Assembly (NCBI GenBank): GCA_965202585.1
Contig: OZ241832.1
Span: 39,618,001 to 39,682,000, forward strand
DNA from: Thalia democratica
Taxonomy: Eukaryota
Reading direction: 5' to 3'
DNA: 64,000 nt
Shown here: positions 3,356 to 32,882 of the stretch, in pieces
How positions within the stretch are numbered: position 1 is the first letter of the stretch
Layout: each line of letters opens with the position of its first letter
Program-made: the position numbers and the translations under genes
Notes under the pieces: generated by a model
What the model was told of the DNA's origin: nothing
Databases searched by the model: none
What the model saw: only the letters and a program-made list of their open reading frames with translations

Positions 3356-3766
3356 TTAAGCGCGTTCACCACGGATGCGACGGGCAAGTTGGATGTCTTT
3401 TGGCATGATAGTTACTCTTTTGGCATGGATGGCACACAAGTTGGTATCTTCGAAAAGTCCGACCAAGTAAGCTTCAGCAGCTTCTTGCAGAGCCAGGACT
3501 GCAGAGTTTTGGAAACGCAAGTCAGTCTTGAAATCTTGAGCGATTTCGCGAACTAGGCGTTGGAACGGCAGCTTGCGGATCAAAAGCTCAGTGGACTTCT
3601 GGTAACGACGGATCTCACGAAGAGCTACTGTTCCCGGGCGGTAACGATGAGGCTTCTTTACGCCTCCAGTTGTTGGTGCACTCTTGCGTGCTGCCTTCGT
3701 GGCAATTTGTTTCTTGGGTGCTTTTCCTCCAGTTGTTTTTCTTGCAGTTTGTTTGGTACGAGCCAT
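3356..3766 (-). CDS. H3: Histone H3 variant, copy 1 (S10T, R17K, L20I, A31T, S86N, M90L, A96)
   Basis: Intact intronless 136-codon ORF with the full H3 tail and fold. Substitutions were read against canonical metazoan H3. Confidence 0.97.
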
Positions 3767-4869
3767 CTTTAATTTTAACTAAATAACCTATTTTATTGAA
3801 ATACACTTATTATTATTTTTTAGCTTATTTCAACTTTATAAAACAGTTTAAATTTCTTATTGTTCTGAATATATTTATAACTTAATAGTTTTAATTTTTT
3901 ATTGTATAGTCATTACGGTCTAAGAACAGGAAGTTTAGATTAACAAAATTCAAAAACATTAAAATATTCAATAATAATTGGTCAATAGGCATCGAAAAAA
4001 ATACAATTTAAGTTTTTTAATTAAAGGTGAAACAAACTTAGCTAATCGGCGTTTTTTAATACAATGAACTTCATAAAACTAACATAAAGTAATTCATCTT
4101 TAATATTATTTTTAGTAACCCTACTAATTAAAAACTATAACTTAAGCTGTACATGGATTAAAGTCATTTTGAATCATTAAGCCCCTGCAACTTCCATATG
4201 GTTTAGTGTATATCAATTACTCATTTTAGTATATATAGTATAACTTTAAGTAATTATAATCAACTTGCTTGATATTAATTGCATTTGACCTAAAATACAT
4301 ACATGAGCAAGTATATCATTACTGCTAACGAAAATAATGTGTAGTACTATCATAGCTTATATGAATTTTTTTTAAGTTTCTTTTAAAAATCGAAAACAAG
4401 TTTAATTTATTTTTATTATAGTTTGTTGAAGTTTTCCAAAACAATGTTTAAACGTTAATTCAATGTAAATAAAAAAAAACAAACAAGATAGTTTTTAACA
4501 CCTTTAAAAACAGATGCTTTATTTTTTAGTTGCTAAAGCTAATAGTTATTAATGCTTAGATAGTCGAAAACTTTAACCGTTCTTAACACGTTGTTTATAT
4601 ATTTAGATTAGTCAGTCAAAAACTAAAATACTAATAGTTTTGATAAATAATTTATAGCTTTCGTAGTCTAGTGGGCACAGTTTTTTTTTAATAATTAAGT
4701 ATGCTTTGCTATTGAAAAGATTTATGACCACTGATTAGATGAATATCATTGATACGAGCCTTCAAGTTAGAAATACAGTTGTACTTTCTAAAACTAACAA
4801 AATAAAATATTGGTGCGAAAGTACTAAAACTTTGAAACAAGTTCATGATTCAATTTAATATTATAGTCT

Positions 4870-5825
4870 TACTGAATTTTTTACGAAATTTCAGTAAATG
4901 ACTACAAAAGATTATTAAACGACAATATTAGTAAATTACAAAAAAAATACTGATTAAACTATGAAACCTATTAATCTAAATTCTAGATGTTATTAATTTA
5001 ACTAATAATTTAAAAACACATGACGGAATTTAAAAAATTCGTAAAAAACGCCTACATAATGGTTAAAAACCATTAAGAAAACTTTTGGACTCCCAATTGT
5101 AGATTAATCAACACTTCTAAGTCCGAGGTAGGTCGTGTATGTGAGGTTAAAATTGCCTGCATCAATAAAGCTGTGCGTTTTAAATCTAACTTATGCAGTG
5201 GACTGATACAGACCAATTAAGTTGTCTCACTGGTTTAGAAAAACAAACGTACAGCTTTTTTAAGTTTGATGTAGTATGTTTTAATCCTTTTATCAGTGAA
5301 GAACTAGTAATAAAATCACTAAAACTCACTGGTAATTATACTAGCGTACCTAATGAAGACTTGAGTCTAATAAAAACGCATGTAGGTATTACTTTATGAT
5401 CTAGAAAACCTAAGGTGCAAGAAAAGAGCGAACAACAACAGATTTTTTTTGATGCAGCGCAGGGATAGTTTATGGGTGGAGAATTTTACAAATAGTAGGA
5501 CTTTTTTCGTTAGACGGGTTGAATAATATATTTGGTTTAGAAATAATTGGGTTGTACAAGGACGATGGTCTAGTTGTACTGCCTAATTCTTCTGGCTTTT
5601 AAGTTGAAAAGTTAAAAAACAAACGCACGCTTTCTTCAAGTCTAAAGGGGTTACGAGTCACTGTTTAATCACCAATGATGACAACTGACAACCTGGATGT
5701 GAAACTCAACTTGTATGATGTCTCTTATATGCTTTATAAAAAGTAAAGTTCAAAAATTATGTTTATTAACAAAAATTTTAGTCACCAGAAAACTTCAGAA
5801 AACTAATACTAAATTAAATTAATCA
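4870..5825 (+). mobile_element. Decayed PLE RT fragment (unit 2)
   Basis: Homologous to 1075-2039; contains LYKDDGL. Confidence 0.85.
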
Positions 5826-30438: not shown

Positions 30439-30849
30439 ATGGCTCGTACTAAACAAGCTGCGAAAAAATCAACTGGAGGAAAAGCTCCCAGGAAAAAAAT
30501 TGCCACGAAGGCAGCACGCAAGAGTGCACCATCAACTGGAGGCGTAAAGAAGCCTCATCGTTACCGCCCGGGAACAGTGGCTCTTCGTGAGATCCGTCGT
30601 TACCAGAAGTCCACTGAGCTTTTGATCCGCAAGCTGCCGTTCCAACGCCTAGTTCGCGAAATCGCTCAAGATTTCAAGACTGACTTGCGTTTCCAAAGCT
30701 CTGCAGTCCTTGCTCTGCAAGAAGCTGCTGAAGCTTACTTGGTCGAACTTTTTGAAGATACCAACTACTGTGCCATCCATGCCAAGAGAGTAACTATCAT
30801 GCCAAAAGACATCCAACTTGCCCGTCGCATCCGTGGTGAACGCGCTTAA
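30439..30849 (+). CDS. H3: Histone H3 variant, copy 8 (T6A, R8K, Q19K, L20I, A31S, M90L, G102E, L109Y)
   Basis: Intact ORF, ATG at 30439. Confidence 0.95.
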
Positions 30850-32471
30850 CTTAATGTCTAAAGCAGTGTTATTGATGTGTTATAAGTTCTATTAGTTTCT
30901 TTTCTATGGTTTATTCTAACATTTCTATTTTTGTGTGTTTTATGTACATATTAAAGATTCTTCACTTCTATTTGTAGTAGAAGTATTTTCGTAATAAACT
31001 ATGTTCAAAGATTACTTTCATTGTGTTGTATTGTTTAACCTTAGTCTTATATTTTTAAGTTTACTAATTGTTATTATCTTAATCGAAGAAGAACGGTTCT
31101 GCTGTTGATAGATAATAAAATCCACCTGAAAAAATTACCGCTTACAAACGCTATATTAGTAATCTCAAAATAATAGATGAAAAAACTTATTGTTTTCACA
31201 ATTTATCTTATGTAATTTAAAATTGTAATAGGTTATGGCTGTCATGAGTTTGAAACATTGATTTTGTGCTGGCTGTTGAAGTTAGTAAGTAAGGTTTATT
31301 ACTAAAAAGAAGATTCTTCAACACTAAATTTAAACTATTTTGAGCACATTCGTACAAATATGTGTAAATCGAAAAAAAGCTTATGTTGTATAATTAGTGT
31401 ATATAAAATTTATCTACACTTGATTTAGTTATACTGCGAAGTATGATAGTATTATGAAGTACTAAAAATCTTACCACTTACAATTGATTTAAGCCAAATT
31501 CAGCTGTCATTAACAAAATTATTAAGTTGTTTAGTTTAGTTATTGGCAGAGAAATTATAAATCACTAGACTACGAAAAATATAAATTATATATTTAAAAA
31601 TTTCTAGTATTCTAATGTTTTGACTGACTAATTAAATATATAAACAACTTGTTAAATCAATGCATCAATAACTTTTAGCTTTAGCAACTAAAAATAAAAC
31701 ATCTATTTTTAAAGGCTCTTAAAAACTATCTTGTAAGTTTGTGTTATTTTATTTACATTGAATGAATATTTAACATTGTTTTGGAAAACTTCAACAAACT
31801 ACAATAAAAATAAAGTAAACTTGTAAGTTCTTTTCAAAAGTTTTTTTTTAAATCCATATTAGCTATGATAGTACTACACATTATTTTTGTTAGCACTGCT
31901 AACTTAGCAGTTATACTTGCTCATGTATGTATTTTAGGTTAAAGACAATTAATGTCAGAGCCAGTTGATTATAATTACTTAAAATTTTACTATACATACT
32001 AAAATGAGTAATTGATACACACAAAACCATATGGAAACTACAGTAGTTTATTAATTACTAATGACATTAACCCATATTTAGTTTAAGTTTAAGTTCTTGT
32101 TTGGTATAGTTATTTAAAATATTTGTAAGGATGTTTTACTTCATGATAATTTTATGAGGTTCTTTATATTATAAAAGCATCGATTAGCTAAGATTGTTTC
32201 ATCTTTAGATAAAATACCACAATTGTATATTTTTCGATGCCTATTGACCTATTAAAATGGAATACTTTAATGTTTTTGAATTTTGGTGATTAAAACTTCC
32301 TTTCTTTAGTCTATAATGACTATACAACAAAAAATTTAAAACAACTTTGTTACAACACATTCAGGAAATATAAGAAATTAAACTACTTTTTAAACTTTTT
32401 TAAGTCGAAATAAACTAAAAAATAATTTAATTTACGTTTCAATAAAATAGGTTATTTAATTGAAATTAAAA

Positions 32472-32882
32472 ATGGCTCGTACCAAACAAACTGCGAAAAA
32501 ATCAACTGGAGGAAAAGCACCCAGGAAAAAAATTGCCACGAAAGCTGCACGCAAGAGTGCACCAACAACTGGAGGCGTTAAGAAGCCTCATCGTTACCGC
32601 CCGGGAACAGTGGCTCTTCGTGAGATCCGTCGTTACCAGAAGTCCACTGAGCTTTTGATCCGCAAGCTGCCGTTCCAACGCCTAGTTCGTGAAATCGCTC
32701 AAGATTTCAAGACTGACTTGCGTTTCCAAAGCTCTGCAGTCCTGGCTCTGCAAGAAGCTGCTGAAGCTTACTTGGTCGGACTATTTGAAGATACCAACTA
32801 CTGTGCCATTCATACCAAGAGAGTAACTATCATGCCAAAAGACATTCAACTTGCCCGTCGCATCCGTGGTGAACGCGCTTAA
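32472..32882 (+). CDS. H3: Histone H3 variant, copy 9 (R8K, Q19K, L20I, A31T, M90L, L109Y, A114T)
   Basis: Intact ORF, ATG at 32472. Confidence 0.95.

What the first reader, a model, noticed from the sequence alone, without database searches (positions are those of the whole stretch)
3356..32882. Tail variants are shuffled combinatorially between paralogs
Seen: positions 10 and 31 occur in all four combinations (copy 2 S/S, copy 3 S/T, copy 4 T/T, copy 6 T/S; both are TCA/ACA codon switches). States at 6, 8, 17, 19, 32, 86 and 125 are also mosaic across copies. A simple duplication tree without recurrent mutation cannot give four gametes. Inference: short-tract gene conversion or unequal crossover reassorts phospho-acceptor and methyl-acceptor states, producing a small combinatorial library of H3 tails.
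Basis: partly seen in the sequence, partly recalled or inferred. Interest (0 to 1): 0.7.

Follow-up and report, generated by a model that had tools for sequence, protein, structure and literature searches.

The report
Mosaic histone H3 variant gene cluster
A 42-kb cluster of twelve young histone H3 variant genes has been patched together by copying between copies (gene conversion), which is ordinary for tandem gene families; nothing shows that the mixed tail variants form a selected "library".

Summary
Residue 10 (nt 31) and residue 31 (nt 94) are TCA/ACA switches and occur in all four combinations in copies 2, 3, 4 and 6. Other tail and fold sites are mosaic too.

The cluster has 12 members, confined to one locus. 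Nine are intact and in the stated range. One is frameshifted at 37386-37795. Two lie just upstream of the window.

Exchange between paralogs is well supported:
- 157 of 406 informative-site pairs in the CDS are incompatible.
- PHI gives p=0.012-0.028 for the CDS and <=1e-4 with proximal flanks.
- Sawyer's test gives p=0.0005.
- Every sequence partition rejects the trees of the other partitions.
- Near-perfect islands of about 230-700 nt sit in an 80-90 % background and run into non-coding DNA.
- Exchange also occurs between inverted arms, which points to conversion rather than crossover.

Recurrent mutation contributes as well. Nt 94 has three states, and codon 10 encodes S, T and L.

The "combinatorial library" reading is not supported. 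Synonymous sites are shuffled as much as non-synonymous ones. dN/dS is 0.25-0.33 overall and 0.43-0.48 in the tail, never above 1. Several copies look decayed. Expression could not be tested.

The genes lack the histone stem-loop and carry a poly(A) signal. The scan had already noted that on this window.

The parts
3356..3766 (-). c1, intact H3 variant CDS (tail T6 R8 T10 K17 T31 T32)
7127..7537 (-). c2, intact H3 variant CDS (A6 K8 S10 S31 A32; V117M, Q125H)
10862..11272 (-). c3, intact CDS (A6 K8 S10 T31 T32; D77E, I124S). Its unit starts only about 235-255 nt upstream, and it lies 0.94 kb from c4
11800..12210 (-). c4, intact CDS (A6 K8 T10 T31 T32; Q125H). The usual poly(A) hexamer is mutated to ACTAAA
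14546..14971 (-). c5, CDS with stop codon changed to Tyr (+YILSK), L10, K17, P121Q and G132D. The poly(A) region is deleted
18347..18757 (-). c6, intact CDS (A6 K8 T10 S31 T32). It differs from c4 only at nt 94 and nt 309, both matching c2
25239..25649 (+). c7, intact CDS on the inverted arm (T10 S31 A32; M120I, A135V)
30439..30849 (+). c8, intact CDS (S10 K19 S31; G102E, L109Y). Recombinant: c6-like 5' flank and c9-like 3' part
32472..32882 (+). c9, intact CDS (T6 K8 S10 K19 T31; L109Y, A114T)
37386..37795 (+). c10, pseudogene: 1-nt deletion in the A-run at codon 19 causes a frameshift. It keeps the ancestral T6 R8 S10 A31
6733..7429 (-). c2 side of the c2-c6 identity island (CDS nt 109 to about 400 nt past the stop). 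It is 98-100 % identical against a background of about 85 %, with perfect runs of 243, 315 and 117 nt. The c6 side is about 17953-18649
   Evidence: Sawyer fragment nt 363-619, global p=0.0105
3508..3734 (-). c1 side of a 227-nt perfect run shared with c5 (14713-14939). The proximal 5' flanks of the two copies are only 66-80 % identical
11697..12197 (-). c4 side of the c4-c6 island (nt 14 to about 514, 99-100 %). The flank just upstream is 80-85 % identical. The c6 side is about 18244-18744
30246..30426 (+). c8 proximal 5' flank, which carries the c6 type (opposite arm) rather than the c9/c10 type
   Evidence: p=1e-4
3208..3213 (-). AATAAA 143 nt after the c1 stop. The same hexamer lies 131-144 nt after the stop in 10 of 12 copies, e.g. 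6979-6984, 18199-18204, 30993-30998
19373..21090 (-). Unit remnant: 5' flank (-1878..-165) with no CDS, lying between the two inverted arms

Best explanation
This is a young, lineage-specific cluster of twelve intronless histone H3 variant genes. The cluster has two inverted arms and spans about 42 kb. The genes descend from the genome's stem-loop-bearing 'group 2' H3 genes, have lost the histone 3' stem-loop, and carry a poly(A) signal instead.

The copies evolve under relaxed but still detectable purifying selection. They repeatedly exchange segments by ectopic (interlocus) gene conversion, plus local duplication and unequal exchange. Tracts of a few hundred nucleotides cover the CDS and 3' UTR, and their end points fall inside or next to the tail-coding region. 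Overlapping tracts therefore leave each copy a different patchwork.

A few recurrent point mutations at residues 10, 31 and 32 add to this. Together they produce the four-gamete S/T pattern. The combinations are a by-product of ordinary concerted and birth-and-death dynamics, not a selected repertoire.

Shown: the mosaic structure, the statistical signal of recombination, the tracts, the loss of the stem-loop, and dN/dS below 1. Inferred: the direction and order of events, and that the combinations are neutral by-products.
For: Family and locus:
- The 3' UTR finds exactly 12 places in the 802-Mb genome, all in this cluster.
- Pfam Histone, E=6.6e-48.
- No Rfam stem-loop in the cluster even at E<=10. 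Group-2 and array H3 genes of the same genome have one right after the stop.
- AATAAA lies 131-144 nt after the stop in 10 of 12 copies.

Recombination:
- 157 of 406 site pairs are incompatible.
- PHI p=0.012-0.028 for the CDS and <=1e-4 for -260..+600.
- Sawyer SSCF p=0.029 for the CDS and 0.0005 with flanks; MCF p=0.010. Globally significant fragments are c2-c6 and cA-c4.
- Partition trees conflict with high support: (c1,c5) 83 in the CDS 5' half, (cB,c5) 96 in the distal 5' flank and 78 in the CDS 3' half, and (c2,c6) 99 in the 3' flank.
- All 12 cross-partition AU tests reject, with p from 0.014 down to 1e-65.
- Identity islands of 230-700 nt extend into non-coding DNA.
- c8 is a c6/c9 recombinant across the inverted arms, p=1e-4.
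- CDS dS is 0.09, against 5' flank K of 0.23-0.27. dS is uncorrelated with distal-flank or 3' UTR divergence.

The process looks neutral:
- Synonymous and non-synonymous sites are equally incompatible.
- omega is 0.33 (LRT against 1, p=2e-6), and 0.48 in the tail (p=0.046).

Decay: c10 is frameshifted, cB and c5 have lost the stop and carry G132D, c4 and c5 have lost the poly(A) hexamer, and the fold carries G102E, L109Y, P121Q and I124S.
Against: - Inside the 123-nt tail, Rm is 5 with intervals as short as 5-7 nt. This is denser than the resolvable tracts. No single fragment inside the CDS is globally significant.
- The simulation null with strong rate heterogeneity already produces many incompatibilities. 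P is 0.016 by count and 0.11 by fraction. For any single site pair, recurrent mutation therefore cannot be separated from micro-patch conversion.
- All 11 intact copies encode different tails, and the promoter motifs and poly(A) signal are kept. This fits function.
- Expression and population data are missing.
Confidence: 0.75

Rival explanations
1. Selected combinatorial repertoire. The copies are all expressed replication-independent H3 variants. Selection keeps different combinations of modifiable tail residues (6, 8, 10, 17, 19, 31, 32), and gene conversion generates new combinations.
For: - All 11 intact copies have unique tails.
- The variable residues flank K4, K9, K18 and K27 and include the site that separates H3.1 from H3.3 (residue 31).
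- Tail omega (0.43-0.48) is higher than core omega (0.18).
- Promoter motifs and the poly(A) signal are conserved in most copies.
- Overall omega is below 1, so at least some copies are or were functional.
Against: - Tail omega is below 1 and barely separable from neutrality (binomial p=0.056; LRT p=0.046).
- The tail-versus-core excess of non-synonymous sites is not significant (Fisher p=0.38).
- Synonymous sites are shuffled just as much as non-synonymous ones.
- Radical changes at otherwise invariant fold residues, stop loss, a frameshift and poly(A) loss point to relaxed constraint.
- No RNA evidence was obtained.
Confidence: 0.12
2. No recombination. The pattern comes from recurrent point mutation at a few hypermutable or weakly constrained sites, on one duplication tree.
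For: - Nt 94 and nt 354 are tri-allelic, and codon 10 has three residues.
- The fitted A<->T rate is as high as the transition rate.
- Simulations with 81.5 % invariant sites yield many incompatible pairs.
- c1's Thr10 is isolated inside a c5-like patch.
- Run X3 shows a third state at nt 97 of the c2 position.
Against: - Incompatibility is spatially structured (PHI).
- Seventeen sites, about half of them synonymous, need 26 extra steps.
- Partitions reject each other's trees.
- Perfect runs of several hundred nucleotides in a background of about 85 % identity extend into non-coding DNA.
- Flank types and CDS types are recombined.
Confidence: 0.04
3. Assembly artefact. Chimeric consensus among near-identical tandem copies creates false mosaics.
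For: The copies are 94-99.5 % identical in the CDS. Only k=31 unitigs were available, and these cannot phase nt 31 with nt 94.
Against: - Flanks differ by 10-30 % with many indels, so copies are easy to tell apart.
- X1 unitigs match unique stretches and the c2, c3 and c4 CDS without differences, at single-copy depth of about 40-50.
- Mosaic blocks are hundreds of nucleotides long and are consistent across markers.
Confidence: 0.04

Closest known systems
Interlocus (ectopic) gene conversion and concerted evolution in tandem multigene families (reviews: PMC3966226, PMC3924837)
   Same: Non-reciprocal transfer of segments of a few hundred nucleotides between 90-99 % identical paralogs. The result is a homogenised CDS, a mosaic of shared variants, four-gamete violations, and discordant trees along the gene. 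The reviews also note that conversion can raise variation within a gene.
   Different: Nothing in principle. The substrate here is a histone H3 variant family. H3 families are usually described as evolving by birth-and-death under strong purifying selection (own knowledge: Nei and Rooney; Rooney et al.), with protein-identical copies. The group-2 H3 genes of this same genome behave that way (13 synonymous and 0 non-synonymous differences).
Tunicate lineage-specific H3 variants, e.g. Oikopleura dioica H3t.1-3 (PMC3156773)
   Same: H3t.3 is an intronless orphan gene with a degenerate stem-loop, three tail substitutions and ten fold substitutions. It is a lineage-specific variant in a pelagic tunicate with a strongly expanded histone repertoire.
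   Different: The Oikopleura variants are single genes with shown testis-specific expression. Here there are 12 clustered, mutually converting copies with unknown expression.
H3.3 replacement histone
   Same: Replication-independent gene features: no stem-loop and a poly(A) signal. Residue 31 is Ser (animal H3.3) or Thr (plant H3.3, own knowledge) in 11 of 12 copies.
   Different: Residues 87-90 are SAVL, close to the canonical SAVM and not AAIG. The genes are intronless. They derive from stem-loop-bearing group-2 H3 genes (dS about 0.54), not from H3.3.
Programmed conversion-based diversity systems (chicken Ig pseudo-V genes, trypanosome VSG, Neisseria pilE/pilS)
   Same: Segmental gene conversion among clustered paralogs creates new combinations of variable positions.
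   Different: Those systems have one expression site plus silent donors, directional somatic or clonal conversion, and diversifying selection. Here every copy has its own promoter and 3' end, omega is below 1, and synonymous sites are shuffled equally.

Membership tests
Core histone H3 (Pfam PF00125) | Histone fold domain with an H3-type N-terminal tail | tested here: met
   PF00125 E=6.6e-48, residues 8-132 of c4. The copies are 93-95 % identical to the other H3 genes of this genome.
Replication-dependent canonical histone gene | 3' UTR stem-loop (Rfam RF00032) shortly after the stop codon | tested here: not met
   No RF00032 match in window 3000-38500 even at E<=10, and none at the gathering score. 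Positive controls: group-2 H3 loci reach 29-39 bits 13-15 nt after the stop, and array H3 reaches 22-23 bits.
Replication-dependent canonical histone gene | Embedded in repeats together with the other core histone genes | tested here: not met
   The units hold H3 only. ORF lists and tblastn show no other histone in the 42-kb cluster. Canonical H3 genes sit in arrays of about 7.2-kb period elsewhere, and stem-loops of neighbouring histone genes are seen in L032/L033.
H3.3 replacement variant | AAIG at residues 87-90 (chaperone specificity) | tested here: not met
   All copies read SAVL at residues 87-90, preceded by N or S at residue 86.
H3.3 replacement variant | Ser31 | tested here: inconclusive
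   Ser31 in five copies (cB, c2, c6, c7, c8), Thr31 in six, and Ala31 in the pseudogene c10.
H3.3 replacement variant | Polyadenylated, replication-independent transcript | tested here: inconclusive
   AATAAA lies 131-144 nt after the stop in 10 of 12 copies and there is no stem-loop. No RNA run was available to show transcripts.
Interlocus gene conversion / concerted evolution | Statistically significant mosaicism along aligned paralogs | tested here: met
   PHI p<=1e-4; Sawyer SSCF p=0.0005 and MCF p=0.010; all AU tests reject.
Interlocus gene conversion / concerted evolution | High-identity tracts with sharp edges that extend into non-coding DNA | tested here: met
   c2-c6 nt 109-805 is 98-100 % identical against about 85 %. 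c4-c6 and c1-c5 show similar islands.
Interlocus gene conversion / concerted evolution | Non-reciprocal internal patches or exchange between inverted copies, which excludes simple unequal crossover | tested here: met
   c5 carries a c1-like patch inside cB-like flanks. c1 carries a c5-like patch inside c4-like flanks. c8 on the plus arm has the c6 5' flank of the minus arm.
Programmed or selected combinatorial diversity system | Diversifying selection on the variable positions (dN/dS > 1) | tested here: not met
   Tail omega is 0.43 (NG86) and 0.48 (codon ML). Overall omega is 0.25-0.33.
Programmed or selected combinatorial diversity system | Shuffling targeted to functional positions | tested here: not met
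   Mean number of incompatible partners is 10.0 for non-synonymous and 11.6 for synonymous sites, p=0.48.
Programmed or selected combinatorial diversity system | Expression of the variants | not testable with these tools
   No RNA run holds the locus, and the runs laid were DNA-like unitigs.

The most novel reading that the evidence does not exclude
The cluster is a working set of replication-independent H3 variants of a pelagic tunicate, possibly specific to the germline or a life-cycle stage. Each copy carries a different pattern of modifiable tail residues around K4, K9 and K27: T6/A6, R8/K8, S10/T10/L10, R17/K17, Q19/K19, A/S/T31 and T32/A32. Gene conversion between copies supplies new combinations that selection retains. 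That would make it a genetically encoded, combinatorial 'hard-wired histone code'.
Probability: 0.1. Interest if true: 0.7.

Novelty: new member of a known kind. Interest (0 to 1): 0.35.

Why it matters
Histone H3 is among the most conserved proteins. Its gene families are textbook cases of protein-identical copies kept by purifying selection. Here, in one genome, a daughter family has lost the stem-loop, relaxed its constraint (omega about 0.3, against 0 in its parent family), and become a patchwork through gene conversion. That makes it a clean natural example of how new histone variants start, and of how conversion spreads or recombines tail substitutions next to K4, K9 and K27.

The mechanism itself is ordinary. 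The locus becomes important for chromatin biology only if the copies prove to be expressed and selected. It is also a warning for annotation: four-gamete patterns among tandem paralogs are expected and should not be read as designed diversity.

Tried and rejected
- Exact-sequence look-up of nine proteins in the 15-billion collection found none.
- The metagenome scan with c4 returned 80 loci, all with the canonical tail [21 protein letters not shown]. It gave no relatives of the variant family and no population sample of it.
- The run search found no RNA run. The four runs laid were Logan unitigs, so they give no phasing, expression or depth information. In X3 (a second organism label), the only contig at c2 shows other letters at CDS nt 66 and nt 97 (window 7472 and 7441). 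This would be a new state at residue 32, but the contig may come from a paralog, so I did not build on it.
- My 3SEQ-like maximum-excursion statistic suits single breakpoints (c8, p=1e-4). It does not suit internal patches, so the c6, c5, c1, c3 and c2 triples gave p=0.06-0.47 even though the patches are plain in the site lists.
- Within the CDS alone, no Sawyer fragment is globally significant.
- Pfam found nothing in the flank ORFs at 1291-1620, 8968-9378 and 16522-16866.
- The first codon-model LRT attempts, several script calls, three paper searches and one findings look-up failed for technical reasons. The LRT was repeated successfully.
- The paper search for salp histones gave only unrelated hits.
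- The large protein searches were not used. The family is plainly H3, and the claim does not rest on absence of relatives.
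Full report
**What is there**

The window is G000:C8:39618001-39682000 of an 802-Mb, 27 % G+C eukaryotic genome that holds hundreds of H3 genes. I did not test that. Small shares of the locus in marine metagenome runs are at least compatible with it.

tblastn finds nine intact H3 ORFs between 3356 and 32882, plus a tenth copy at 37386-37795. The tenth copy is frameshifted by a 1-nt deletion in an A-run. Two further copies lie just upstream of the window, at C8:39613734-39614141 (cA) and 39617555-39617962 (cB). A search of the whole genome with the c1 3' UTR finds exactly 12 places, all in this cluster. 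The family is therefore confined to this locus of about 42 kb.

The cluster has two inverted arms. cA, cB and c1-c6 lie on the minus strand, and c7-c10 on the plus strand. A CDS-less unit remnant (19373-21090) lies between the arms. The basic unit is about 3.77 kb. Local rearrangements are present: c3 and c4 are 0.94 kb apart, c8 and c9 are 2.0 kb apart, and c3 and c8 have truncated 5' flanks.

**Kind of gene**

The proteins are clear H3 (PF00125, E=6.6e-48). None of the 12 genes has the histone 3' stem-loop, even at E<=10. The nearest relatives in the same genome are the 'group 2' H3 genes, 12-14 % diverged in nucleotides and protein-invariant. These, and the canonical tandem-array H3 genes, carry the stem-loop right after the stop codon.

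The cluster copies instead share a 3' UTR of about 190 nt. AATAAA lies 131-144 nt after the stop in 10 of 12 copies. It is mutated in c4 and deleted in c5. A CCAAT box lies near -200 to -225. Six copies also have TATAAA at -74. Residues 87-90 read SAVL, so these are not H3.3 genes. This agrees with the earlier first-reader note on this window (s1-311523).

**The observation**

Codon 10 is TCA in c2 and c3 and ACA in c4 and c6. Codon 31 is TCA in c2 and c6 and ACA in c3 and c4. All four combinations are real, and both are T/A switches at the first codon position.

Among the 11 intact copies there are 51 variable and 29 informative CDS sites. Of 406 site pairs, 157 are incompatible. Hudson-Kaplan Rm is 11 for the CDS and 5 within nt 1-123. 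On the ML tree, 17 sites need 26 extra steps, and nt 31 and nt 94 need four steps each. The explanation 'one recurrent mutation on a consistent tree' therefore fails.

**Is it recombination?**

Five independent lines say yes.

1. Incompatibility is spatially structured. PHI gives p=0.012-0.028 for the CDS alone and p<=1e-4 for -260..+600 and -950..+600.
2. Sawyer's permutation test gives SSCF p=0.029 for the CDS and p=0.0005 with flanks, and MCF p=0.010. Two fragments are globally significant: c2-c6 (nt 363-619, p=0.0105) and cA-c4 (-91..+39, p=0.0145).
3. ML trees of the distal 5' flank, proximal 5' flank, CDS 5' half, CDS 3' half and 3' flank conflict with good support. In AU tests on the last four, each partition rejects the trees of the other three, with p from 0.014 to 1e-65. 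The two CDS halves also reject each other's trees.
4. Pairwise profiles show near-perfect islands in a background of 80-90 % identity:
   - c2-c6 from nt 109 to about 805, with perfect runs of 243, 315 and 117 nt, mostly non-coding;
   - c4-c6 from about nt 14 to 514;
   - c1-c5 from nt 33 to 259, with proximal 5' flanks only 66-80 % identical.
5. CDS synonymous divergence (0.09) is 2.5-3 times lower than 5' flank divergence (0.23-0.27). It is uncorrelated with distal-flank or 3' UTR divergence.

A tree-only simulation gave a mean of 66 incompatible pairs against 157 observed (P=0.016 by count, 0.11 by fraction). Its model (81.5 % invariant sites) was fitted to these same reticulate data. It is therefore generous to recurrent mutation.

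**Conversion rather than crossover**

Several copies carry internal patches. c5 has cB-like flanks and a cB-like 3' CDS, including G132D and the shared stop loss, but a c1-like 5' CDS. c1 has c4-like flanks on both sides and c5-like states at nt 12-26, 53 and 141. c8 on the plus arm has the proximal 5' flank of c6 on the minus arm and the 3' part of c9 (p=1e-4). Exchange between inverted copies, and internal patches, indicate non-reciprocal conversion. Unequal exchange or local duplication explains the changes in spacing.

**The quartet itself**

c6 (T10/S31) equals c4 at nt 12, 24 and 31. It equals c2 at nt 94, nt 309 and all ten informative 3' UTR sites. A junction between nt 31 and nt 94 in c6 therefore accounts for the fourth gamete.

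Recurrent mutation also acts at these codons:
- Nt 94 has three states: G/Ala in c10 and the outgroups, A/Thr, and T/Ser.
- Codon 10 encodes S, T and L.
- c1's Thr10 stands alone inside a c5-like patch bounded by nt 26 and nt 53. This implies either a second S-to-T mutation or a patch shorter than 27 nt.
- The fitted A<->T rate equals the transition rate.

The Rm intervals of 5-40 nt in the tail are too dense to resolve. They may reflect overlapping tract ends, patchy mismatch repair or recurrent hits.

**Library or by-product?**

All 11 intact copies encode different proteins and different tails. The signatures of selected diversity are nevertheless absent.

- Synonymous informative sites have as many incompatible partners as non-synonymous ones (11.6 vs 10.0, p=0.48).
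- omega is 0.25 (NG86) to 0.33 (ML; LRT against 1, p=2e-6). It is 0.43-0.48 in the tail and 0.18 in the core (NG86).
- The tail is barely distinguishable from neutral (binomial p=0.056; LRT p=0.046). It is not significantly richer in non-synonymous variable sites than the core (Fisher p=0.38).
- The parent group-2 family shows 13 synonymous and 0 non-synonymous differences.
- Decay is visible: a frameshift in c10, stop loss plus G132D in cB and c5, loss of the poly(A) hexamer in c4 and c5, and radical replacements at otherwise invariant fold positions (G102E, L109Y, P121Q, I124S).

Purifying selection is still detectable, so the family is or recently was functional, at least in part.

**Expression and population**

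No RNA run holds the locus. The runs laid were k=31 unitigs. X1 agrees with the assembled c2, c3 and c4 CDS. X3, a second organism label, shows other letters at c2 nt 66 and nt 97, but paralog cross-mapping cannot be excluded. A metagenome scan returned only canonical H3 tails.

**Comparison with known systems**

The mechanism is ordinary interlocus gene conversion as reviewed in PMC3966226 and PMC3924837. The gene type resembles lineage-specific tunicate variants such as Oikopleura H3t.3, an intronless orphan with a degenerate stem-loop and tail and fold substitutions (PMC3156773). It is not H3.3 and not a programmed diversity system.

**Verdict**

The conversion inference is supported. The 'combinatorial library' reading is unsupported but not excluded, at about 0.1. 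This is a new member of a known kind, of moderate interest.

Noticed in passing
G000:C8:39613734-39614141 and 39617555-39617977 (upstream of the window; L031, L039): Two further members of the same H3 family lie just before the window start. cA carries K14E and M120I. cB keeps the ancestral L20 and shares G132D and the stop-to-Tyr extension (+YILSK) with c5.
   Followed up: yes
window 10862-12210: c3 and c4 are only 0.94 kb apart and look like a local tandem duplication of the segment -234..+675. Even so, their proximal 5' flanks now belong to different haplotype classes (type II vs type I).
   Followed up: partly
window 29109-30232: Upstream of c8 there is a separate copy of the 5' flank (-907..-66) without a CDS, plus a fragment (-643..-430). 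c8 itself starts only at about -208. This is a rearranged unit.
   Followed up: partly
window 1291-1620, 8968-9378 (+) and equivalent places in other units: A recurring ORF fragment (…LTGLEKQTYSFFKFDV…SEELVI.SLKLAGIYTSVPNEDLSLIK…) lies about 2 kb downstream of the H3 genes and is part of the repeat unit. Pfam finds nothing. From memory it resembles a retroelement reverse-transcriptase motif.
   Followed up: partly
window 42155-46220: A G+C-richer island (31-35 % against about 27 %) holds two minus-strand ORFs with C2H2 zinc-finger-like motifs (42172-42750, 192 aa; 44178-46220, 680 aa).
   Followed up: no
G000:C10:25.64-26.05 Mb, C7:14.67-14.91 Mb, C7:31.37-31.41 Mb, C8:46.19-46.31 Mb, C8:54.37-54.45 Mb, C167, C342: Large tandem arrays of canonical H3 with periods of about 6.6-9.9 kb, often about 7.2 kb. 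The H3 protein carries I62L and I130M relative to the group-2 H3. Stem-loops of neighbouring histone genes are visible in L032 and L033.
   Followed up: partly
L004-L030 (C2 52.6-55.5 Mb, C9 3.1-3.2 Mb, C10 28.0-28.6 Mb): The dispersed 'group 2' H3 genes have stem-loops and nearly all encode one protein (AIHSKR, SAVM; L004 has SAVL). Two sampled copies differ at 13 sites, all synonymous. These genes are the closest outgroup of the cluster.
   Followed up: partly
window 7441 and 7472 (c2 CDS nt 97 and nt 66), run X3: In a second organism label, the only unitig laid here reads coding T at nt 97 (residue 32 would be Ser) and A at nt 66 (synonymous). Neither state occurs in any of the 12 assembled copies. 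The unitig may come from a paralog.
   Followed up: no
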